Below the pieces are notes generated by a model that made no database searches, was not told the DNA's origin, and worked only from the letters and a program-made list of their open reading frames with translations. Both the position numbers and the translations under genes were made by a program. This document shows, one piece after another, positions 90 to 40,821 of a DNA stretch of 64,000 nt (positions within the stretch are counted from its first letter, which is position 1; every line of letters starts with the position of its first letter). Source of the stretch: Magallana gigas (lineage: Eukaryota); NCBI RefSeq assembly GCF_963853765.1, contig NC_088857.1:47430001-47494000 (forward strand). Direction: 5' to 3'.

Positions 90-3000
90 TTGAGAATGTT
101 AGTAGTAATGCCCCAGTGACATTCCGAGTCTTCCATGTATCTTCTCCCATCAGCAGGCTTCTCTGACAACAGCGTCATCTGCCAAATAAAGGAGTGATAA
201 TTCAAGAACCACCAAAAGAAATCACAGTCTATGCCTTGATATTTCAGTTTAAATGTGAAACACAAAATGCAAAAGATTTGCAGTTGCCTATTCAACATTA
301 AATAAACATGAAGTTGAGCACCTCGCATTACAAAATCTAGTCATTTTCAACATCCATCATTTTAACTTACAATGCCCTGTCTAGAATTCCTTGTTATATC
401 TTTAAAGAATGAATTTTCAAAACTTACCAATTGCTCGTTGGTTCTTTCTTTGCATGAACCTCTGGTTTTCCTTTCTACAGACACAGCATACTGTAACTAC
501 AAACCAAATGTATCCAGTTAAACATCATATGATTTGAAACCTATTTTAATGAATTTAATCAAATCTTGTAGATGTATGCATGTACCAACCTCAGGCATAA
601 GTGTGTTCGGTTTCTTGGCCCACAAATATGAGTCAATTTTTTCTAGAAGATTGTGCATCACATTTCTACAAAGGCAAAAAGTTAATCTGTATCATAACAG
701 TCATGTTTTTCTTCAACAATTAAAAAATTCAATACATACTAATTTAAAATGCATGCATGCATATATAATAATTTTTACAGTTTTTCTGCAACTCCAAAAT
801 GCAGTTATTAACGTGTTTTATAAAAAAAAAAATCCAAAATCTGGTGTAAATTTGAATTTTTAGACTCTACCTCTCTTTAACGATTAGAAAATAGAAATAT
901 TGATAAATAATTATATATGTGTCTGAAGTGACCCTGTCTAACCTTTGATGTCTGTGGTTTAATGCTGTAGTAATACTGGACTGGTAGACTGACTGGTCAA
1001 TGCAGCCCTCTGCGACCTCCATCTCTGTCCAAATCCCCACACAGACCGACTCGTCCAAGTGATGGAGCATCAGAGACGCCACCTCACTCAAGGAGATGCA
1101 CCCCCCACCACACACTGGTCCATCTGAAAACTCCGTTGTCTCCTTATGTGTTAAGCTTTCAGTTTCTAGGCCACAAGATTCTGGTGATTTGGATTTTCTT
1201 TCATGAAAAGTTATATTCTCAAGTTCTCCGCAGGAACTTTCTTTATTTGGAACACTTATATCACTATTTTTTACCTGGGAATGCAAATCAAACAATTCAG
1301 ACATCTTTTCGAAGCTTGATTGGTTATCTGACGCCTCTTTGTGAATCAATGAACTATCATGGGCTGTTGGATTTCTATAGCTATTGTTTTCAACATTAGA
1401 ATGATACTTCTTTTGATGATTGTCAGAATACAACTGAAACTGTTCTACGAAGGATTTCCAGTCACTTATTGTCTCTGGAAGATCTGTTGGAACATTTTCA
1501 AAGAAATTACAATAATGAAAATATTTACACAGTACATGTATATCTATAAAAAAAAATTTAATTTGTTGGTACTGTTCTTGTCACAATTAAAAGATAAGGT
1601 TCAGATTTTTACCCATTTCACTGAAAAGTTGAAGATCTCCAAGACAGAATATCATGGTGGCCATTTCTCTCCATTTTTGCTGCTTTTTCAATAAGATGAG
1701 ACAACCTCTCCAATAACTGTTTAAGGAATAGAGAAGAATCAATCGCAACTTCTCGGGCCTTTCCGGCAAGCTCGGAAAAACACCTTGAATGTATTAACAT
1801 CACCGGATGTTAGAATTTTATACAAAATGGAGTCGCTTCCCATTAAAATAAGTATCGGCTAGACAGTCTTGTATGTCGCTTCTGTGTTATATTTTAGTGT
1901 ATATCGTTTACTTTAATGAAGTATAGCTCACATCTCAACAGATTGTAAAATGTGTTCTATTTATTTCAAGTTTTAAAATCAAAGGCCTGAAGGGCCACAA
2001 TGGCGTCGAGTTAAAGTTAATTTGAAGAGTAAAAACCTAAATAATTTTTTAAACAAGTGAAAAGCTGTCAATGAGACAGCTAACTGGGTTTTCTTTTTAT
2101 ATTTGAACTGTATCCATAATCCATGTCAACCCATATCCAGTGAAATAAAGTACCTCATATGCAATATTTTGCTAAAAAAAGACTAAGTTCAAAAGCTGGT
2201 ATTTTTTTCATAAATAATCAGAAATAAAAATTCTAAAAATATTCACACCTCTGATACATGTACAATTAATCTGCAAAAGAACAACTTTTTATCTATAAAA
2301 CTGTAGGAATAGTTATCCGTACAATGAGGTAACCCTATATGCAATATTTTGCTAAAAATTGACTAACTTCAAAAGCTGGTATTTTTTTCATAAATTATCA
2401 GTAACCAAAATACAAGCAATTTTTTTTCATAAATTATCAGTAACCAAACTCCTAGCAATAAGCACACCTCTGATATATGTATAACTGATCTGCAAAAGAA
2501 AAATTTCCTATCTTGAGAACTGTAGGAGGAGTTATCCGTACAATGAGGGTACCCTATATGCAATATTTTGCCAAAAATGACTAAGTTCAAAAGCTGGTAT
2601 TTTTTTCATAAATTATTGAAAATCAAAATCCTAACAATATGCATACCTCTGATATATGTGTAATTGATCTGCAAAAGAACAACTTCCTGTTTTGAAAACT
2701 GTATGAGGACTTATCCGTACAATGAGGGTACCCTATATGCAATATTTTGTCAAAAAATGACTAAGTTCAAAAGCTGGTATTTTTTTCATAAATTATCGAA
2801 AATCAAAATCCTAGCAATATGCATACCTCTGATATATGTATAACTGATCTGCAAAAGAACAACTTCCTATTTTGAAAACTGTAGGAGGACTTATCCGTAC
2901 AATGAGGGTACCCTATATGCAATATTTTGCCAAAAAATGACCAAGTTCAAAAGCTGGTATTATTTTCATAAATTATCGAAAATCAAAATCCTAGCAATAT

Positions 3001-6000
3001 GCATACCTCTGATATATGTTTAATTGATCTGCAAAAGAACAACTTCCTATTTTGAAAACTGTAGGAGGACTTATCCATACAATGATGGTACCCTATATGC
3101 AATATTTTGCCAAAAAATGACCAAGTTCAAAAGCTGGTATTTTGTTTTCCATAAATTATCAAAAAAAAATTTTTTCAAAAAAAATAGAAAATGTTATTTA
3201 TCACATAACTAATAAAATTACAATTCATTACAAATTTGCTCACCTAATTCTTAAAAAGTTTTGAATTTCAATTGAAAATTTAAGTTTATAGTACTGTGGT
3301 TTTATTAATTTTCGTGGGTATCAATTTTCGTGGATTTTCTGAAAACCACAGTTTCAAGGATACTTAATTTCGTGGCCAATGATCCAAATAATACAAATTA
3401 TTAGTTGAAATTGAACTTCAATGAACATTTAATTTCGTGGATTATCTTAACAACGAAATCCACCAAAATTGGTATTCAACGAATATTGATGAAACCACAG
3501 TAATATCTTAGGAGTTAAAAATTTTTTAGATTTTTTTTCTCTATTTATATGGAAATAAATATTTAAATTATTATTGTGTTTAATTCTATATATTGTATAC
3601 TGCTGATAACCACTCTGTCTCTTATTATCAATTTCATCTAAAATTCACAAGGATCCAAATGACACGGGCCGAAAAGATCGGGGGTAGATAAAAGAAAGCA
3701 CCCATTCACGTTGTTTACAAAGTGAAAGTAGTTCATTAGTTGGTTTATGTAGATGTACTTATCGCTCGATTAGGAAGTTTTGTTTCAATAAGATCAAACA
3801 TTTGTGCATTGTCAATTTTCGATATGGATACAAAATCATCTATTTTGCAGGCTAGTACATTTCATAACCAAATTGAGTATGTAAGCCCAGCTATCGCATG
3901 TGTCTCGGTGCTAGTGTATTCATCCGCTGAAACCGAGACATATTGTTTTCAATAAAATGTGAACATTTTTAAAGACGGCAACCATTTCGAATCTGCAAAC
4001 TTGTTTTGTTGACGTACAGTTCTGCTCGAAATTGAAGTATGTCATCTATTTTTCTTGAAATACATACGAAAACTTTGCACTCATTTGAGTTGTTTGGCTC
4101 CTAAAAATGTAACTTCCGGACGTACGATCCCTAGATGGCTTTCGAGCTTCGCTCGACGCCATAAAAAGGGGGGTTGTCATGGACGCCTATGTAATACATT
4201 CGAGGTGTTTTTCCGAGCTTGCCGGAAAGGCCCGAGAAGTTGCGATTGAGAGAAGAATAACAAGAGTTATTCCCCTTGAAAACAATCACATTCTACAAAT
4301 GGTATATTTGTCTAATCATTGTATTTAGAGGCATTTTTTTTTAAAAATCCTAATACATAATGTATTATTCATCCATTTTGATAAATGATTTTTACATGCA
4401 TTAAAAACAGCAACTAATTACATTCATACTACAACACATCTATTTTACTACCAGTAAATAAATATCATTACTGTTACTAAAAATTCATACATTTCATTTC
4501 CAATTCAATCAAATTTCTCCATCTTTAATAGAATTTGTGAAATAAGGTTCTAATATCATGCACTTTAAGTAGTCAAACTCTGCAACATTTATGAAATTTA
4601 CATAGAGAACACAAAACTAGAGTTGCTCTTACTAAAACCCTGGTGTACGAAATAGAAAACACCAAGAGTTACCTACCCTGACTCTGTACACATGCTAAAA
4701 CATTTTTCTCTGTGATCCTCACTGATGTTGAGTAGAATAAAGTCTACTTTATCCCTGTCTTCCCAAGGCACACAATGGCTAGACAGCCTGTGTTAGAGAA
4801 GGATTAATGTAATACATCTAAATATCAGCTTTGGCTAAAATTGTTAAACTTTTAATACTCAGTAATTCAAAATTAATCCTTTCAAATATATATCATATCA
4901 AAATATATAAGATAAAATAACTGAGAAACAAATACTTTTTAAACCCTTGTTTTGGGACCAAAAATACCCAATTGATGGCATGAACAACAAATTGCCTGTC
5001 ATACCAGGGGTTGCCATCTTCATCCTTGAGCTGCTTAGATATCACAGTCTTCCCCAGTAATGTACGAAGCCAGGTCAGTGCCACTCTCTCCTCCATTATC
5101 AAGTTACTTTTGAGCAACCTGCAAAATGGAAAAACAATATTGTCACTAACTGCACTGTACTTTTAAATTTCATTACAATATGAAACTGAAAAGATTTTTT
5201 GTATCAATAACTTTTTCACAATGCATGACTAAAATGACAAGTTTAAAGACAATAACCATCATGATTTTACTGTTTTTAATGATCTTAAACAAGTTAGTTT
5301 TAAGCCCTTTTGCTGAATAACTAGTCTTAAAATTTTGTCTACAAAAAGGTACACTGATACATGTATGTTACATATAGTTAATGAATGACTAATGACCTTC
5401 TAGATGACTGAAGCTCTACAAATCTCCCACACATGTACTGATCCAGAAGGACGGTCTCATCTTGTTGGTAGTGTTGACATAAAAATATGATATCTACTGG
5501 CTGGAGATGGTCACATTTTACACAGAAGGAGACAGTCTCCACTGGAAACCTCTTGAACAATCTAAAATATTAAAATCAGTGAAATTATGAGCTCATATCA
5601 AAATACTGCCATATTGAAAACATTTAAACTCAATTTCTTCTACATGCACCACATCTGTCAAAAGGCCAAAGGTGAATACCAGAAATGGGCACATTTTTAT
5701 TTCACAGTGTTTTTTAAATAAAATTTATCATCTGTGACATTCAACATGTTCAACAGTAAAACCTTCCATATATCTATAACTAAGTGCAGTGTCCAATTTA
5801 TCAGTAACTCTTTCTAACCTCATTTCTTGATTTAAGTGATTTCATTAAAACCTACTTGTAAACAGAAAACAACGCCCTCTGTTGGTCATGTCTACTCAAC
5901 TCCAACATGCTAATGGCTTCATCTTTACTCTTCTTATCTAGTGCTAACAAGGAACTGTCCGCTTCATTCTTGACTGAAAAATAAATAAATCATAATACCT

Positions 6001-9000
6001 TTCTAGATAAGTTGATATGCATTGCAATAAATGCAATACATCTTGAATTGCATAAGGATTAAACATTAGCATACAATATTAACCTTGCAGACTCTGCATC
6101 CAAGCTGTCCACACTTGGAACTTATCGTCTTGTGACATAGTACTCCCTCTTGAGTATACGATTTGTATCAAATCAATTTTGTCCAGTAAGAAGAAATAGC
6201 ACCTGACAAATGCTGCTATATCACTAGTATTGAGTGCCATCACTCCATTCATTCCTAAAGACCTTATGTTTGATATGCCATGTTCTAAAATTTCACAATG
6301 TGAACTATCTAAGAAATTATTTTCTTCAGTATCACAAACACTTAAGTTTTCATTTACAGTACTTTTGCAGGGTCCCTGAGTATTGACTACAGACTCAAGA
6401 ACACTTGAGCCGCTAATGCCTTCTCCTTTGTCACCAGGGTTACCAAACACATCTGTTTTCGTATGTTCTCCACTTAATCTCACAGAGGTATTAAACACAG
6501 AAGCATTGTTTGTTTCATTTGTCTGGTAACAGTTTGGACAGATATCACAGAAAGAAATAGCACCAAGATCAGGTTCAATAGAACCAACTATATTATTGAA
6601 ACATCGGGAGTTAAAACACTGTCTAGTCAAATCTTTCACAAGAGTAAACATTTCACTAGATAGCTGGAGAGGATCTTCTACATTACAGAAATCTTGAACA
6701 CTAAGCTTCTCAAAATCACTGAGCTCTAACATAGGACTTGATGGTTGTTCACATTCTGTATCCATTACTTCCTTGTCTTTCTCTGTATCATCCAGAGCTG
6801 TCTGAACATCTTCCATAACATCACTTTTATTCTCCTCTTTTGAAGACTCGGTAACCAGCCTTAGCCTACATCTCTCTGAATGTTTACTTTGTAGCACCTT
6901 CAAATATTTCTGAGTATTTAAATTCTTCATCACAGTATTCAGAGAAATCATCCAATCAGCAAGTGTCTCCCACAATGCATCAGGATTAAGCATGACAGAA
7001 AAGTCCTGCAGCTTTGCCCTAGTTTTGACAGATTTCTGGATAAACTCATTGAGGCCCAATATGGGTGATTCTTGCACTGGATCAGAAAGAGGAATGTCTT
7101 GTTTCAATTCTTGTTCTTCAGGTATACAGGAAGTTACCTTAATCAAACAGAAAAAACATAATATGATAAATGACAAAAAAAATTTCCCTATATGAACATA
7201 CTAAGAAGACAATGTCAAATTGATTTTGTTTTCTGTGAAAATAAAAATAGCTACTTTATAATAGGCTAGTTCAGTTATTAGCATATATATGCATCAAGTA
7301 TCAAATACCCTTTATGCAGTGAAAATTAATACCCTTATCACAAACCTTGGGCTCTATTTGAAATGGAATTTCATCCAAAGTCACTTTAAAAAGCAAGGAA
7401 GGAAAATTAACATAAGATTTCCCTACTCCTTGCTCTGTCAGTGCAAATATAAGTTAAAGCTGTTCAAGATGGATTTTATGATTACATTATTTGGGTCATC
7501 TTTTGGTAAATGTTGATGATGATGTAACATTGATTTTGTTCAAATGACCTCAGTTGAAGATTATTTTACACCCTCAGGTCACAAACAACATTTGTGGAAG
7601 CATGAGCCATTGGTGTTCTGAATTCTTTCAAAAGTTATGGATCAGACATGAAAGTTAAATGGGCAGGTATAGAGTCAGATGGTAATGTTGAATCAAATAT
7701 ATCACAACCTTGACTTCTGATAGGTATAAACATAGGTAATCACAGATTACAAAGCTCACCGAGACGAGGCATCAACTTTATGAGGCATCACCTTTAAAAC
7801 CACCTTTATCATATGATATGAAAATCATAGTTATTGATCTTGGATATTCATGGATACTGTTTTGACACAATATCGTATATCATATGTAACAAAATTGTAT
7901 GATAATCCTATGTTCATTTCATACATTATTATAAGATACAATGTTTATCAATACAATAATATAAAATATGATATTGCATCCAATGATACTTACAATATAT
8001 ATCATTTAATACAATATAATACTGTAATAAATATTGATGCAATATGATTTTGTAACATATAATATGACATTGTATCGTGTTATACATTATTGTATTTAAT
8101 CACATAATACAATATCATAATATCTAATATAAATACAATATAGCATTATTTGATACTATATCATATCACATAATACATCACAATATTGTAACATATGATA
8201 TTATATTGTATAATATAGTATAATTTTGTATTGTATGATATTGTATCATATTTAATACACAATATTGTATCATATGATACAATATAATTTGATAAAACAT
8301 TGTTTCATATCATATGATACAATATCATCTGATACAGTACGATATTATATAATACAATATCATTTTATACAATATCATATCATATGATACAATATCATAT
8401 TATACAATATCATATTAAATGATATCTTATAATATCATATAATACAATTTCATGTATTATATAACAATATATTATATAAACCAATATCATATTATACAAT
8501 ATTGTATCATACGATATGCTATAATTATAATATACAATATCGTATCATATGATACAATATCATATATTGCAATATAATATGAAACAATATCATTCGATAA
8601 AATAATATATTATACAATATCATATTCTACAATATTGTATAATAATATACAATACTATACATAACAATATCATAATACAATATCATATAATAATGTACAA
8701 AAAAATTGATATCATATCATATCATATAAATTTTTACAATATAATGTATGATATTACATTGTATCATATAAAACAATAGTGTATCATATCATAGAATACT
8801 ATATCATAGGAATCATGTTAAATCATTTAACAACAAACACATCTATCAAGCAGGTTTGAGTGAGGTAGGAGAATTTTTAGCATCCTTGATAATGGAGATC
8901 AGGCTCTGCATCTGAAGCTACCTCTGCAATTCATTTATATTATAGTTAAATCAATTATGCAAGCTATTATCTATAAAACATGTAACCTGTTCCAAAAAAC

Positions 9001-33425: not shown

Positions 33426-35018
33426 AAATAATCATGGGTTTGGGTAGTGTTTTTCTTTAAATATTTGTAAAATTTATGGCATGCAAGAGGTACTTGCATT
33501 TAATTAATGTTCTTAAAAGATCTCAAGTAGAGTAATATGAAAGAATAAATCTTTTATGTACCAGTATATATTGTAATGTTTTTCTTACACAGGCCATCAT
33601 CAAGTACAAGCACGTATTGTTCAGTTGATGGCTGAATCAATGAATGGCAAACATTGTTTTAGTGTCGGATTGACTGTTGTAGGTGGGATGGACTGTACAA
33701 TAAAAGATGGCTGAATCAATGAATGGCAAACATTGTTTTAGATAAACAAATCCAGGTATACTGGATAAGTTACAGCAATGATAGAAGATATAGGGAAGCA
33801 GTATATACCCATTGATCAATTCAAACTTTTCAATGGTTTAACATTTTCCTAATTTAAATTTATTAAACCCAATGCAACAAGTTGGTGGTGGTATAATGTA
33901 TAATGTTTTAGACCCATGTCAGTCGGTCGGTCTAACAGTCTTAGGTCTGTTCTTTTTTTCTGCGGAACTTCACTTAAACCACAGCTTAGAATTTTGTAAA
34001 AACTACGAATATAATGCGTAGTTGTACATATTACCAGGAATTCCGGTTATTTTTCTGGGAATTTCTGCACTTTTAAACTTGGACATTTGTTGAATACAGT
34101 AATGGACAGTGTGTTAGCGCAAGTTCTCCTCCCAAACCGCTGCACACAGAATTTTATTAAACTTTGAAGGTAATGTAACCCAAGGACAATGTGTAGGTGT
34201 GCATATTACCGAGAAATTCCGATTCCTTTTATTTTTGGGGGAATTTAGGCTCTTTTGAAATTAGAATTTTGGCCATACCTGTATATACATGTAGAATGTT
34301 CTACCTAATGAACCGTTTGTCAAGACAACTCCTCTTAAACTGCCGTACAAACTTTCAATTGATGAAACTCTATAGGTTATAAGAACACCATGTGTAGATG
34401 GGCAAATTACCAAGAATCCGAATCCAGTATTTTTCTGGGATATTTGGCCCTTTTCAACATTGAGGTCTGGCCATCTAATGACTATAGTAATGAGAATACT
34501 TACACTTTGTAGTGTGAATATGGTATTTGAATTAACTCAATCTAAATGAAACTTTATAAGTAAATTTGGGATTGTGTTGCTGTCAATACACCTTGAATTA
34601 ATTTTCCAGATTTTTTCATTTGTGTCCTTATTTTTTCCACTTTGAGGTTATGGCTCATGCATACCTTTCAGTTGCAATTGTGTACTAATTTACGTTTTCA
34701 CCCTGGGGGAAATGTGTATAGCTTCCTTAGGGTCCTCGAGATAGAACGAAACCAAAAAAGTATAATAATATATTTATTTTAAAACTAATGAAGAAACTGC
34801 AATTACAACATTGTTACAACGAAGTTTCTAAACTCAAGCACTAAAAGTAAAAGATCTGTCTTTACAAAATAAACATTCACCTGCAATCAATCTACGGTTT
34901 CACCGTACGTAATATAAGCGGTCTTCGGTAGTAAGGAAAAGATAATTTATTGTTCTTAAAACATTTTAAATAAGTTCAAAATTAAAAAAAAAAGTCCTTC
35001 AAATTTCCGATTCACTCC

Positions 35019-37311
35019 CTATAACGTAATTTTGGTGGACACACAAATTACTGGGGTTTTCTGGCGAGAGAAGTTCCTCTTCATGGTTAAAACTGCTGAG
35101 TAGCTTCTCTGTATTCGCATAGTTTGGTTTTCCAGTCTTTCTTTTAGATCAATCAGGGTTTTGAATAATGATAATTTTCTTTCCGCTGGAAATTTACCCT
35201 GCAGAAGCCTCCTCTGCTCTATTCGGGCTTTTTCTTCCTCTTGAGCCTCCTTAATCTTATTCTGCACGACTAATTTCTCAAGACGTAGCTGGTTTATCTT
35301 CTCTTGAAGACTTTGTTTCACTTCCGGTAACGTACGTTCACCAGATTCCGCTTCCTGTCCTACGGCGAAATCCATTTCTTGAGGTTTGTCATCTTCCTCC
35401 AATGGCGAAAATTCTCGGCATGGCAAATTAGAGTTCATATTATCCATGTCGATTCTTTCATCGTCGTCCGAGCTTAGAGTCCCGTCTCTAGTCAGACTTG
35501 CGTAGCCTGCGTCCAGAGATTCTTGCATTAAACCCTCCCCTGTGACGTCATTAGCATTCGTCATTGGATACGAAATTATGCTAGAATTATCTGAACGGTC
35601 TTCATTGTTTGCCATTTCTGTGTCATCGTCTGTGGTATTTTTGTGATAATCGGTGTCATACACGATTTCCTGTAAAAGGTCCTCAATAGAAACTCGTGTG
35701 TAGTCGGCCTCGGACATCCCCTGCTCTAGGATCAAGTCAAGGTCATTTTCATACGGTGCATTATAAGTGTATGTTAGGTTGCTATTGTCCCAGTCTTCAT
35801 CAAATGTGTGGCACTCCCAGTCAATAGACACGTCACCCTCGGATATTATAGACCAGCGATAATGGGTCTCAATGTTCTTTTCTGCAGACCGTCTCTGGCG
35901 TTTCGAAATGAAAAGATTCTCTTGCGCTTCAAGTATGTCGTCTTTCTCGGGAATATTACATACTACAAGTCTTTCAACAACTTCGCTTTCCTTTCGACTC
36001 CCCAAATTCTGAATTTCAGCGTATTTATTGTCCGAATCCGACTGATAAATGCACAGCTCAGTGGCTGGAACCTGAATCCAAGGGTTGGTTCTAGTGCTGA
36101 AACGAATGTTCGAATATTCGCGAATGAATAGTAAATTTCTAATATTCGAATGTATATTTAGCATTCGAATATTCGATCACATGTTAAACACCCATATCAA
36201 GCACTGTAAACTATGCAGCATCGTGTTATTTCATTTTACTCGGAACGAAAGTAAATATAAAGCCATCCATGACTGCCATGCTTGGTAGAGTCTATTACTT
36301 AACCCAGTAATAGACTCTTCCATTCCTCTTCCGCCATGCTTGTTTACCTTGAAAGTAAAAGCAGGGTTTACATCGAACGGAGACAAACATTCTGGATTTT
36401 TCAATTCATGTCAGACGCTGAAGAAAAAAATTGCTTAACTGTTTGAACGAGTGTGAGCTACTGAGAATTAATATCGAAAGGTACATCGAAAGTTTTTTTA
36501 AAAGATACCTCGATATAATTTGTTTTGTTTTTTTAAATAAACAGAAGATTTCCGGAGTTATGAGCGTTATCAGTTTTCTGTTTAATACTAAATCAAACAT
36601 GGCGGAAATATTTGGACTGACTTACGAAGTAACGTATCGGTCTCATCCAGGAGTCAGGACTGCAGTATATTATTAAAGAAGTAATAAATCTTTTGATTGT
36701 AGTTGATGGAGATTTTTAAAAAATCAGTATATTATTATTTGCTTAAAAATTAAATGCGCACCCAATTCAATGGATACTCTTGCATTAAGTGTCAACGTCG
36801 AACTGACATGTTTAAGCAGTCTACACATACACCCACTTAGTAATACAAACTATCATATATGCTTAATACATTGTCTATGACGTCTACGAATATTTGAATA
36901 CGAATCGAATAGCACTCACGAATATTCGAATACTGATTTATGGTATTCGTTTCAGCACTAGTTGGTTCGAATCCTTGTTCTTGGTTTCAAGCTGTTGAAT
37001 TGTCCTATATTTTCATAAGTCACAACGCTCTGTTCTAGGGTTTGTAACTCTGTCTCCGAAGTTTGCTGAGTCGCGTGCGTTCGGTTTGCTCTTGATCGGA
37101 GGGTTTCAAACAAAGTGTCCAAGTCTGAATGAAGATCCACCAAATTTGATATACTGTTCTCACGAGAGTGGACTAAAACTTCGGCATGGTCGAAATGTTC
37201 AGTGACAGTATTTGTTTCTTTTAAATTGTCCTTGCATTTGCCAAAATGTTTCTTCTTTTTACTTTTGGATTTTTGAAAGAAGTTGCTGGGAAGAAGCTGT
37301 CGAATCTTCAT
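35019..37311 (-). pseudogene. Uncharacterised ~471-aa protein (acidic disordered middle, C-terminal coiled coil), coding exon interrupted by a hAT-type insertion
   Basis: Removing 36092-36968 (element plus one TSD copy) fuses ORF 36958-37344 and ORF 35019-36164 in frame (...KPRTRIRTN-PWIQVPATELC...). ATG 37311 to stop 35019 gives 1416 nt. Confidence 0.85.
36092..36960. mobile_element. Non-autonomous hAT-type element, 869 bp
   Basis: Perfect 16-bp TIRs tagtgctgaaacgaat / attcgtttcagcacta. Exact 8-bp TSD gttggttc at 36084-36091 and 36961-36968. Subterminal gaatattcgaa repeats. Confidence 0.93.
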
Positions 37312-38771
37312 AGTTCTTGACCTAGAATGAGAAATTATTGTCAAAGTTTTTCATTAATGTAGCATATTTTCGTCTAAAAGGGAACAATTTTAATTAGTTT
37401 CCTATCAAGACACTTCGGTATGGTATTCTTGACCAGTGAGGTCTTAGAAGACCCAGTCTGTTGGAAATACCAACATTCAGGTTCATTTTACACCGTCTTA
37501 AAATTATGGACAATCCACCTGTCTAGAATTTCTTTTCCTATTCATAAATATATGAAACATGCTGGCTGACAAAAATAGCGGAGGCATGCACCAGTCTCCC
37601 CAAAAATGCCCCGCGCTTGTCTTGAAGTTTTAAGGTTGAATATACGTATAGATTGGATCGATCGACTTAAGCTACAATAAGAAGACGGACGTCGGGCGTC
37701 ACTGACCGATGTTATGCTCCAAATGTTTGCACTCGGCATAAATGGAAGAATTGTCTGTTCCATCAATAAAACCTACTGATTGACAATAACAATTATTTAC
37801 CCACTTTGACTAACAATATATGGATAAATGAAGAGAGATTCTGAGAGAAATTTAGACGTGAATTGCGGGAGCATTCTTTCTCTACAATGCTCGCTACCAT
37901 CATATCCGCATGAGCAACCCCAAAGAATTGCAACTCTACAATACTTTATTAAATCTGTATATATTTAATCAGGAAAAGTTTTGTCACCTAGTTCACTTTA
38001 TAACGCTAAATCATTAATGCTTATAATGTATATTTAAATCTGCATACATAAAATGAATCGGTTTCTCCAACCTGACATCAATTCAAAGTGAATGAAAAGT
38101 TGTTTAACTATATAAAATAAAAGTAAAAAAAAAATGTAATATTTTCCATCATGAAACCTACCTTAAGCTGTTTTACAATATGGGCATCCCTAAAACTCTG
38201 ACAAATGGATATCCCAGAATTATCGGATTAACGTGTTCAATTGACACGTTCTACTTTGCGTAGTTATATGTTTTCTGTGTCCCTTTGTACCAGATAAACA
38301 GATGTCATAATCCTTATTCTTTTTTTATTAACTCAGCTGTTTGGGGTAACTTAATAGCAATTATACCTCTGATTCACTTTCAAGAGTACCGCGCTGAATA
38401 AACACATAAGTTGTCATAGTCCGGTCTCGGACGAAATCACGATTTAATTACACATAATCGATGCATAATTAATATGCCTTTAATTGTAGCTACATAAGGT
38501 AGAAGATTTTTCGAACAGTGGGCCTTTTATTCCGTTACCAAATATGTTTTACTATGAATTGGTAAAACATTTTCGTTTCGAATAAACTTGGGATATGCCA
38601 TACAATACAGTGCCGTCATAATTTAAAATGACAACTAAGAATTATGCAGAATTGATGCATTTGTTTCCAATATATTTGTCAAAATCTAAAATGCCTAAAG
38701 TGAAAATGATGAGAAAAAAGGTCGAAGCTGGACAGTGGGTGGAGGGGGGGGGGGGGTCATCGAGGGTTAAA

Positions 38772-38775
<4 letters not shown>

Positions 38776-38813
<38 letters not shown>
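38776..38813 (+). repeat. (GA)n microsatellite
   Basis: Direct sequence. Confidence 0.9.
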
Positions 38814-38815
<2 letters not shown>

Positions 38816-40821
38816 CATTATTATGTGTTGCTGATATGTATAGGAAATCTGATTTTCTCACGCAACCCATATCGGAGAATATTGATCTGACAAATTCCAA
38901 CAGAAGCCGATGACTCATCCGCGTGTTGTGTATTCCATATCGATCTCATAATGAAATCCAACACCAATATTTAATGAAGATGTAACCCAATACTCTGTAA
39001 TTGCTATATTGTCCCGCGATAGCTAGTAGGTTTGTGACTGTTGCAACCGACTGTGGGAAAAATGATGTATTGCATTAATGCTCCATAAATGTTTTCAACA
39101 GTCAAACTTTGCACAGACAATCGTCAACCAAAGTTAATTTTTCCCTTGATAAGCACACTCGTACTACATGTGACGAAATATTTTACAATGCGTTTTGATA
39201 TGATCGTATGTCGATTTCTATAGAACAGAAAACACAATTTTAACAAAAAACGATTTATTTGAATAAATACATGTTCATCGTTAAAATGCAATTTAAACTG
39301 TTTTAATTTATTTCAGAGAATATTATGAAGCAGGTTTTTTTTGTGCCTATGAAGTTTGGTTTGTGTTTCGAGGGGGGAGGGGGGGGGGGGGGCACGTAAA
39401 GTCGAGAAGCCAAAATTTCTGGCACCAAATTTCTTCAAACACCTAAGCGTCTAACACCAAATTACTCATCCGTGAATGGGGGTACGATCGATTATAATGT
39501 TTCGTTATCAACTTCCAACATCATTTTTTCCTACAAATTGAAAACTTTGATGGATCAAACAGCTTGTTTGTTTATTTTTCAATACATTTATATAAGAAAA
39601 GAAAGTTTAAAGCCCTGTTGCTACATTCCTGCGTTAGGAAAATAACGAAATTACGGGAATTATTTTTTTAGTGATGAATTAGTCATCGTTATTCCTTTGA
39701 AAACTCTAATGATGAATAATTAAATCAAAGCCACTCCTTTCGAAATCTCTCTAACATTAAAATCATTTGCTGTATTATGTCTGAAAACCCGCGAATACTT
39801 CATTTTCAATACGTTTTGGAAAAACAAACAATTTTAAAAAATATTACAGGGAAGCCATCCATATGAATTAGACATCATTATTCACCCGGTTACTTGTAGG
39901 ACTTTATTTGGAATTGAAAATCGCTCTGTTGAAATCACAACTAATAATTCCACTAAGCAAGCTAAAAGTATTTAATATATGACATTGGTAATCACATATC
40001 GCTACTAGAAAGCTCCAAAAGCCACAAACACATAGCCTGGCTGCTCGATTTCAACCTTTTATTTTAAAAATACACAGAGTTTGTAAACAAAACAGCACCG
40101 GTGTTGTTACTTGATATGATTTGCTTTGATATGATTGTTAAAATAATCTTCTCTGACATACATGTAATTAAACAGTAATTACATATGATCCTCCAACTTG
40201 ACATAAATGTTTTATTAGGTTATTGAATTTTAACACACTTTCGTTATTATTTATTATGAACACACCATTTATTTTAAAGTATTCCTCTAGAGTCTGTGAC
40301 GAAAACAGAATTTATTTTGCAACGTCTATAATTAATTGGTGTAAAATCTATCCAAGTTTTACAGAATACCTGAATCGTAACTTGATTTTCCTAGAAAATT
40401 TATCCGAGTGCATTTGCACTAAATGACACATAAAATATCGAACACAAAATGAAGGAAGATATTTCATAAGATCATATTACCTGTACAGCTTCCTTCCTTC
40501 TGATCAGAGTCCTCCGAATTCCGAAGCATCGGCATTTCTCTTATAAGCTGTTGCTCAAGAAGGCTTTCTTGGTATGGGTGATTCATTAAGCCCGAGAATT
40601 CCACATCCTATATCGATCCATGCAACCCGACTTCTTTCATTTTTGCTAGTCCCTCGTTGTGCTAGGCATTCGTAAATCGATGCCACCATACAGTAGTTCG
40701 TTAATTAGTCTATAAGCGCCAAACAATGTTTTGAGTATCACAATTGACGCGGTCAGAAAGAAAATTACATTAGAAATCTATTTGAATTTTTCATATATAA
40801 AATGGAAATTAACATCTAAAA

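What the first reader, a model, noticed from the sequence alone, without database searches (positions are those of the whole stretch)
35019..37311. Protein-coding exon split by a recent hAT insertion; the TE supplies both a stop and a new in-frame ATG
Seen: an 869-bp element with perfect 16-bp TIRs and an exact 8-bp TSD (gttggttc) lies inside a long ORF. Excising it restores one 471-aa frame with no other lesion. The first three TIR bases (TAG, 36960-36958) stop the 5' part after 117 aa. The other end contributes an ATG at 36164 and 24 in-frame codons running into the remaining ~357 aa (ORF 35019-36164). Known: 8-bp TSDs and TAG-type termini are typical of hAT elements. Inference: a young insertion allele, probably polymorphic, that is either a null or gives a split or N-terminally truncated protein.
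Basis: partly seen in the sequence, partly recalled or inferred. Interest (0 to 1): 0.75.

Follow-up and report, generated by a model that had tools for sequence, protein, structure and literature searches.

The report
Oyster gene split by hAT transposon
In this oyster reference genome, a conserved but uncharacterised bivalve gene is cut in two by a recent insertion of a small hAT-type jumping gene; other oysters carry the intact gene, so this is an ordinary, well-documented knockout-type polymorphism.

Summary
An 869-bp element (36092-36960) has perfect 16-bp terminal inverted repeats and an exact 8-bp target-site duplication. It sits in the single coding exon of a minus-strand gene.

The element belongs to a real family. 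At least 40 full-length copies are in this genome, and 18 of the 19 other copies checked have their own perfect 8-bp duplications. Related 3.1-kb elements match 15 of 16 repeat bases, have homologous ends, and carry a 612-codon frame like Hermes transposase with a hAT dimerisation domain. It is a non-autonomous hAT.

The uninterrupted 471-aa protein occurs in other oysters at 99% identity, in a cluster of 754 sequences. The junction motif TNPW is invariant from oysters to mussels. Contigs from two probable DNA runs, one RNA run and one unspliced public contig cross the site lacking exactly 877 bp. No other data set shows the filled site.

The insertion is therefore derived, recent and rare. 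It most likely gives a 117-aa truncation, effectively a null allele. The element's in-frame ATG is real, and the assembly's public annotation uses it for a 381-aa protein. Twenty ATGs precede it, so its use is unlikely.

This is an ordinary kind of event. Its value is practical: the reference carries the mutant allele.

The parts
36092..36960 (.). 869-bp non-autonomous hAT element with no coding capacity
   Evidence: At least 40 full-length genomic copies are 89-97% identical to it, out of 161 candidates. This copy differs by 1.4% from the majority of the 20 most similar copies.
36092..36107 (+). Terminal inverted repeat TAGTGCTGAAACGAAT, whose TAGTG start fits the hAT terminal motif YARNG
   Evidence: I3, 100% complementary; 145 exact genomic occurrences, control 0.
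36945..36960 (-). The other terminal inverted repeat. On the minus strand its first three bases, TAG at 36960-36958, are the premature stop of the gene.
36084..36091 (.). Target-site duplication, copy 1 (GTTGGTTC)
   Evidence: (D6).
36961..36968 (.). Target-site duplication, copy 2 (GTTGGTTC)
   Evidence: The empty-site joint has 8 letters that fit on either side.
36961..37311 (-). 5' part of the coding sequence: 117 codons from MKIRQL to RIRTN
   Evidence: It matches residues 1-117 of the intact protein P0001 at 116/117.
35019..36083 (-). 3' part of the coding sequence: 354 codons from PWIQV to KITL, plus the stop. It holds all the strongly conserved motifs and the C-terminal helices.
   Evidence: It matches residues 118-471 of P0001 at 352/354. 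Conservation is and the structure model.
36092..36164 (-). Element-derived ATG (36164) and 24 in-frame codons that lead into the 3' part. Together they form a 381-aa chimeric ORF.
   Evidence: This exact 381-aa protein is on record at NCBI/UniRef, from the assembly's own chromosome only (P0016). Twenty ATGs lie upstream of it after the premature stop.
37322..40480 (-). Intron in the 5' UTR, with a GT donor at 40480-40479 and an AG acceptor at 37323-37322. Exon 1 ends at 40481 and exon 2 starts at 37321, so the whole coding sequence lies in exon 2.
   Evidence: The RNA contig in run X15 continues for 164 letters from 37323 into sequence that maps at 40483.

Best explanation
A non-autonomous hAT transposon of 869 bp inserted by cut-and-paste into codon 117/118 of a single-copy gene, duplicating 8 bp of target. 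The gene is conserved across bivalves. Its protein is largely disordered with a C-terminal helical domain, and its function is unknown. The insertion is derived, recent, and rare or private to the assembled haplotype.

Because the element begins with TAG in the reading frame, the allele encodes only the first 117 residues. It loses every strongly conserved motif downstream of TNPW, so it is most likely a loss-of-function allele. The premature stop lies in the last exon, so the mRNA is predicted to escape nonsense-mediated decay.

Shown: the element, its family and its hAT affiliation; the intact allele in other individuals and species; the gene structure. Inferred: that the truncated product is non-functional; that related 3.1-kb elements supplied the transposase; that the allele is rare in the population.
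For: - **Anatomy.** The repeats, duplication and frames are as described.
- **Family.** At least 40 full-length copies exist, and 18 of the 19 other copies have perfect 8-bp duplications.
- **Autonomous relatives.** L056 2369-5469 is 3101 bp, matches 15 of 16 repeat bases and has a perfect 8-bp duplication. It is collinear with element positions 1-141 (89%), 242-318 (83%) and 412-869 (67.5%). It holds a 612-codon open frame that scores 68.7 bits on PF05699 (cut-off 21.4) and E=1e-24 against Hermes transposase structures. L057 holds two more complete copies.
- **Intact gene.** P0001 is 471 aa, 99% identical, and represents a cluster of 754 sequences. All 13 other members listed are 471 aa.
- **Conservation.** The TNPW junction is invariant in 11 bivalve orthologues, and the family extends to scallops and freshwater mussels.
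- **Empty site.** Contigs in X1, X6 (probable DNA) and X15 (RNA) skip exactly 877 bp. So does L023, which is collinear with the genome through the intron acceptor and is therefore genomic or unspliced.
- **No footprint, and a close haplotype.** The flanks of the X1 empty-site contig differ from the window at only 2 positions in about 1030 nt.
- **No other lesion.** The two coding pieces differ from P0001 by only three substitutions, 1 in the 5' part and 2 in the 3' part.
- **Single copy.** Neither piece has a paralogue in the genome.
Against: - The filled site was seen only in the assembly itself, so its zygosity and population frequency are unknown. Only four other data sets were inspected at the DNA level, and contigs drop rare variants.
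- No RNA data from a carrier were available, so the fate of the mutant transcript is inferred.
- A 381-aa chimeric ORF exists and is annotated, so a truncated protein cannot be formally excluded.
- The family's copies are 1.3-2.5% from their majority. The family is therefore young rather than brand new, and this copy has 16 bases unique among the 20 compared.
Confidence: 0.88

Rival explanations
1. The allele is not a null. Transcripts that start inside the element or read through it would use the element's ATG at 36164. That would make a 381-aa N-terminally truncated protein retaining all the C-terminal conserved motifs, either as a hypomorph or as one half of a split gene.
For: The ORF is open and in frame. 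The assembly's public annotation predicts exactly this protein (P0016). The C-terminal part holds the only confidently folded helices and most invariant residues.
Against: Twenty ATGs lie between the premature stop and this ATG on the mRNA, so reinitiation or leaky scanning is very unlikely. No read starts cluster in the element in the raw RNA run (table 6). The invariant RTRIRTNPW motif is cut, and the conserved N-terminal segment would be missing. An annotation pipeline takes the longest ORF and is not evidence of translation.
Confidence: 0.07
2. The element is removed from the transcript as an intron, so the insertion allele still makes the normal 471-aa protein.
For: The element contains GTGAGT at 36919-36914 and ends in ...TTTCAG CACTAG on the minus strand. 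Some Ds insertions in maize exons are spliced out (own knowledge).
Against: Exact removal of 877 nt has nine possible registers. None has GT..AG on the gene's strand (sequence; the joint ends read GT..TA on the + strand). The in-frame TAG, and a TGA two codons later, lie upstream of the internal donor, so any splice using that donor keeps the stop. The joined form also occurs in probable DNA contigs and in an unspliced contig, so it is an allele and not a splice product.
Confidence: 0.02
3. The insertion is an assembly artefact or a somatic event in the sequenced animal, not a germline allele.
For: The filled site was found in no other data set. The best run holds only 0.80 of the sampled words.
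Against: A misjoin would not create an exact 8-bp duplication of unique coding sequence around a complete element with perfect termini. This copy has 16 private bases, so it is not a collapsed copy of another locus.
Confidence: 0.03

Closest known systems
Ac/Ds of maize: non-autonomous Ds insertions in exons (own knowledge)
   Same: A non-autonomous hAT element with short terminal repeats and an 8-bp target-site duplication interrupts a coding exon. Autonomous relatives elsewhere in the genome encode the transposase.
   Different: The host is an animal (a bivalve). No excision footprints or splicing-out were seen here. Away from its termini the 869-bp element is only 67-89% identical to the 3.1-kb elements found, so it is not a simple recent deletion of them.
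Hermes transposon of the housefly (PDB 2BW3, 4D1Q, 8EDG)
   Same: The 612-codon frame of the related 3.1-kb elements aligns with Hermes transposase over almost its full length (residues 48-552, E=1e-24). It carries the hAT C-terminal dimerisation domain.
   Different: Sequence similarity is distant. The terminal repeats differ, and activity is untested.
Tol2 in the medaka tyrosinase gene, an albino allele (own knowledge)
   Same: A natural hAT insertion in a coding exon of an animal gene segregates as a loss-of-function allele.
   Different: Tol2 is autonomous at 4.7 kb and its allele has a visible phenotype and proven excision. Here the element is non-autonomous and no phenotype or excision is known.
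hAT and MITE content of bivalve genomes (PMC10294476)
   Same: That survey found hAT among the richest DDE/D superfamilies in bivalves and found that non-autonomous DNA elements occupy much of the genome. This family fits that picture.
   Different: That work is genome-wide and consensus-based. It does not describe this insertion or this gene.

Membership tests
hAT superfamily of DNA transposons | 8-bp target-site duplication | tested here: met
   This copy has GTTGGTTC on both sides. Eighteen of the 19 other copies have perfect 8-bp duplications and one has 7/8. The three 3.1-kb relatives also have perfect 8-bp duplications.
hAT superfamily of DNA transposons | Short terminal inverted repeats beginning 5'-YARNG | tested here: met
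   The perfect 16-bp repeat begins TAGTG. The YARNG rule itself is from own knowledge of the hAT literature.
hAT superfamily of DNA transposons | A related autonomous element with matching ends that encodes a hAT transposase with the C-terminal dimerisation domain | tested here: met
   L056 2369-5469 matches 15 of 16 repeat bases and its ends are collinear with the 869-bp element. Its 612-codon frame scores 68.7 bits on PF05699 against a cut-off of 21.4, and E=1e-24 against Hermes transposase. L053 is a 3'-truncated relic with the exact 16-bp repeat and the same type of transposase frame. An earlier candidate, L024, was rejected: its transposase belongs to a different hAT nested inside a copy of the element.
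hAT superfamily of DNA transposons | Mobilisation of the 869-bp element by that transposase | not testable with these tools
   This needs a transposition assay. The one-base difference in the repeats (TAGTG versus TAGAG) leaves cross-mobilisation an inference.
Non-autonomous (MITE-like) element | No coding capacity, many homogeneous copies, same ends as an autonomous element | tested here: met
   No ORF longer than 81 aa lies within the element. At least 40 full-length copies exist. The ends are homologous to those of the 3.1-kb elements. At 869 bp it is at or above the usual size limit for a MITE.
DUF4653 (PF15546), for the interrupted host protein | Score above the Pfam gathering threshold of 27 bits | tested here: not met
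   P0001 and the window pieces have no hit. Mussel and pearl-oyster orthologues reach only 19.5-24.9 bits over the C-terminal helices. The protein is not filed under this family.

The most novel reading that the evidence does not exclude
The insertion allele may be a TE-made new isoform rather than a null. A transcript starting in or near the hAT element would use the element's own ATG to express a 381-aa protein that keeps all the conserved C-terminal motifs. The family may also still be transposing in living oysters, since three complete 3.1-kb copies have open 612-codon frames and perfect duplications. That would make it a current source of coding-sequence mutations and a possible native gene-transfer tool for bivalves.
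Probability: 0.08. Interest if true: 0.5.

Novelty: new member of a known kind. Interest (0 to 1): 0.3.

Why it matters
1. **The reference is wrong for this gene.** The reference haplotype carries the mutant allele of a gene conserved across bivalves. The public protein record derived from it (381 aa, with 24 transposon-derived residues at its start) misrepresents the gene. The normal product is 471 aa.
2. **It documents recent transposon activity.** A coding exon was hit by a young hAT family. That family still has complete, open-frame autonomous relatives in the genome. This fits the very high structural variation and heterozygosity reported for oysters (PMC10546077). It also offers one concrete example of how recessive load could arise.
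3. **It is a natural knockout.** If carriers can be found, it allows study of an uncharacterised, largely disordered bivalve protein.

None of this is surprising to a specialist.

Tried and rejected
- **L024 as the autonomous parent: rejected.** L024 is a 4220-bp element with the exact repeats. Its 552-aa ORF carries DUF4371 and the hAT dimerisation domain. Its 3.3-kb core has its own termini (CAGGGGCG...). The core also recurs without the element's ends at another locus (L030). It is flanked inside L024 by a short duplication, so it is a different hAT nested in a copy of the element.
- **Other long pairs of exact repeats: uninformative.** L025-L029 and L031 have no open frame of 200 aa or more and no transposase similarity. 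They are probably copies with other insertions.
It was replaced by complete listings of the repeat.
- **Function of the host protein: nothing usable.**
  - Pfam gave no hit.
  - A PDB profile search gave nothing.
  - The ESM Atlas gave only a weak score of 0.75.
  - The term DUF4653 occurs in no paper of the library.
  - The AlphaFold model has mean pLDDT 48, with confident helices only at 64-81, 369-413 and 416-456. No fold search was run on it.
- **Raw RNA reads (X24)** gave only sparse cover of the 3' coding part and nothing at this locus's junctions. Expression of the insertion allele could not be addressed.
- **Exact look-ups of the 117-aa and 128-aa N-terminal products** found nothing in the protein collection.

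Full report
**What is in the sequence**

On the minus strand an ATG at 37311 opens a frame that runs for 117 codons to RIRTN. It stops at TAG (36960-36958). That TAG is the first three bases of an 869-bp element at 36092-36960. The element has perfect 16-bp terminal inverted repeats, TAGTGCTGAAACGAAT, and is flanked by an exact 8-bp direct repeat. The repeat is GTTGGTTC on the + strand, at 36084-36091 and 36961-36968.

Near the other end of the element, an ATG at 36164 opens a 381-aa ORF (35019-36164). Its first 24 codons come from the element. Next comes RTN from the duplicated target, then PWIQV and onward. The insert plus duplication is 877 bp, which is 1 mod 3. This is exactly the frame offset between the two parts, so removing it gives 117 + 354 = 471 codons. 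Every coordinate and number in the finding is correct.

**The element is a real mobile-element family**

The genome is 564 Mb in 29 contigs, ten of them chromosome-sized. A search of it with the 869 bp returned 40 scored full-length matches at 89-97% identity, out of 161 candidates. The exact 16-mer repeat occurs 145 times and its reversed control 0 times.

Of the 19 other copies whose ends I located, 18 have perfect 8-bp duplications. Each has a different sequence, and one matches at 7 of 8 positions. Among the 20 most similar copies, each differs from the majority base by 1.3-2.5%. This copy differs by 1.4% and has 16 bases unique to it. That sample is biased towards relatives of this copy. 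The subterminal regions carry repeats of the palindromic motif TTCGAATATTCG (D2). Motifs of this kind are usual in hAT ends (own knowledge).

**It is a hAT**

My first candidate parent was L024, a 4220-bp element with the exact repeats. It holds an ORF with DUF4371 and the hAT dimerisation domain. This turned out to be misleading, for three reasons:

- The 3.3-kb core has its own termini (CAGGGGCG...).
- The core recurs at another locus (L030) without the element's ends.
- In L024 the core is flanked by a short duplication of the element's own sequence.

L024 is therefore a copy of the element carrying a nested, different hAT.

I then listed all repeat sites and fetched every unpaired or widely spaced one. 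This led to L053, a 3'-truncated relic. It has the exact repeat and 141 bp of subterminal sequence at 89% identity. It also holds a 548-codon frame that matches Hermes transposase (E=5e-11).

Searching the genome with that frame found copies at 93% identity with open frames of 570-612 codons. One of them is L056 2369-5469:

- It is a complete 3101-bp element with repeats TAGAGCTGAAACGAAT, matching 15 of 16 bases.
- It has a perfect 8-bp duplication, TATCAAAC.
- It is collinear with the 869-bp element at positions 1-141 (89%), 242-318 (83%) and 412-869 (67.5%).
- Its 612-codon frame scores 68.7 bits on PF05699, the hAT dimerisation domain, against a cut-off of 21.4.
- The same frame matches Hermes structures 4D1Q, 2BW3 and 8EDG at E=1e-24 over residues 48-552.

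L057 holds two more such copies, one nested in the other. Both have perfect 8-bp duplications. The defining features of a hAT are therefore met. Whether these elements actually mobilise the 869-bp element is an inference.

**The interrupted gene is real, single-copy and conserved**

Neither part has a paralogue in the genome. A protein search with the 354-aa part found P0001, which is 471 aa, 99% identical and represents a cluster of 754 sequences. P0001 matches the 5' part at 116/117 over residues 1-117. It matches the 3' part at 352/354 over residues 118-471, and the two pieces join exactly at N117|P118. The window allele thus has no lesion other than the insertion.

Orthologues of 457-485 aa come from other oysters (including Saccostrea echinata), a pearl oyster and mussels. 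More distant relatives come from scallops and freshwater mussels. In an 11-sequence alignment R111, I114, T116, N117, P118 and W119 are invariant. The element therefore sits inside one of the most conserved motifs.

The protein has no Pfam family. Only mussel and pearl-oyster orthologues give sub-threshold DUF4653 hits over the C-terminus. An AlphaFold model is confident only for helices 64-81, 369-413 and 416-456. This suggests a mostly disordered protein with short conserved motifs and a C-terminal helical domain. Its function is unknown.

**Gene structure**

An RNA contig from run X15 continues for 164 letters past 37323 into sequence that maps at 40483. The genomic sequence there shows a GT donor at 40480 and an AG acceptor at 37323-37322. 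Exon 1 is therefore 5' UTR, and the entire coding sequence lies in exon 2.

**The empty site exists in other animals**

Laying four public runs on 34900-37400 gave one joint shared by X1, X6 (both probable DNA) and X15 (RNA). The joint runs from 36083 to 36961 and skips 877 bases, with 8 letters fitting on either side. The contigs extend 221-1184 nt on each side of it.

A public contig, L023, encodes P0001. It is collinear with the window from 37869 to 36961 and from 36091 to 35013 at 99% identity. It runs through the intron acceptor, so it is genomic or unspliced, and it has the same empty site.

None of the nine possible registers for exact removal has GT..AG on the gene's strand, so the joined form is an allele and not a splice product. 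No contig or read joined this locus's flanks to the element. The loose ends at the element's borders lead to other loci (table 7).

The only record of the 381-aa chimeric ORF is P0016, which comes from the assembly's own 57.3-Mb chromosome. All 13 other listed members of that cluster are 471 aa.

The X1 empty-site contig differs from the window's flanks at only 2 positions in about 1030 nt. The insertion therefore arose on a haplotype still present in uninterrupted form. Because the empty sites match the orthologous sequence with no footprint, the empty state is ancestral.

**Likely consequence**

The allele encodes a 117-aa N-terminal fragment. It lacks the motifs RWSIISEGD and MQESLDAGYASLTRD and the C-terminal helices. 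The stop is in the last exon, so nonsense-mediated decay is not expected (inference from established rules).

The GTGAGT at 36919 is downstream of the TAG and cannot rescue the frame. The element's ATG at 36164 is preceded on the mRNA by 20 other ATGs after the stop. No cluster of read starts was seen in the element. Translation of the 381-aa chimera is therefore unlikely, although the annotation predicts it. No RNA from a carrier could be examined.

**Context and verdict**

hAT is among the richest DNA-transposon superfamilies in bivalves, and non-autonomous elements are abundant there (PMC10294476). Oyster genomes show 2.6-3.3% heterozygosity, and large indels are the main difference between haplotypes and close species (PMC10546077).

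Run labels, the homologues and the size and layout of the genome point to an oyster of the genus Crassostrea (Magallana). This is probably the Pacific oyster or a close relative, but that is an inference.

The finding is correct and well supported but of a known kind. It is a recent, apparently rare, gene-disrupting insertion of a non-autonomous hAT. Its practical value is as a caveat on the reference annotation and as a possible natural knockout.

Noticed in passing
L024 501-4720 (G000:C3:15566019-15570238) and L030 2093-5420 (G000:C3, about 28.05 Mb): A second, unrelated hAT of about 3.3 kb has termini CAGGGGCG... and a DUF4371 plus hAT-dimerisation transposase. It is nested inside one copy of the 869-bp element. 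A 97% identical copy elsewhere has an uninterrupted 724-codon frame.
   Followed up: partly
L057 2338-8629 (G000:C2, about 27.285-27.291 Mb): One 3.1-kb Hermes-like hAT (4647-7788, duplication TCAATTGG) is inserted into another copy of the same family (2338-8629, duplication ATCAAGTC). Both duplications are perfect and both frames are open, which suggests recent activity of the autonomous family.
   Followed up: partly
window 35019-36164 (-): The exact 381-aa chimeric ORF, which starts on the transposon's ATG, is on record at NCBI/UniRef as a protein of this assembly (P0016). The reference annotation therefore carries a transposon-derived N-terminus for this gene.
   Followed up: yes
window 40481-40650 (-): Exon 1 (5' UTR) of the gene contains several short upstream ORFs. 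One runs across the splice junction and ends at a TGA overlapping the main ATG region. They were not examined further.
   Followed up: no
window 36092-36960, run X24: Raw poly(A) RNA reads cover the element on both strands. Many loose ends fall exactly at its borders, so copies of this family lie inside transcripts at other loci.
   Followed up: no
window 36109-36175 and 36886-36933: The palindromic motif TTCGAATATTCG and near-copies recur in both subterminal regions of the element. They may be transposase-binding sites.
   Followed up: no
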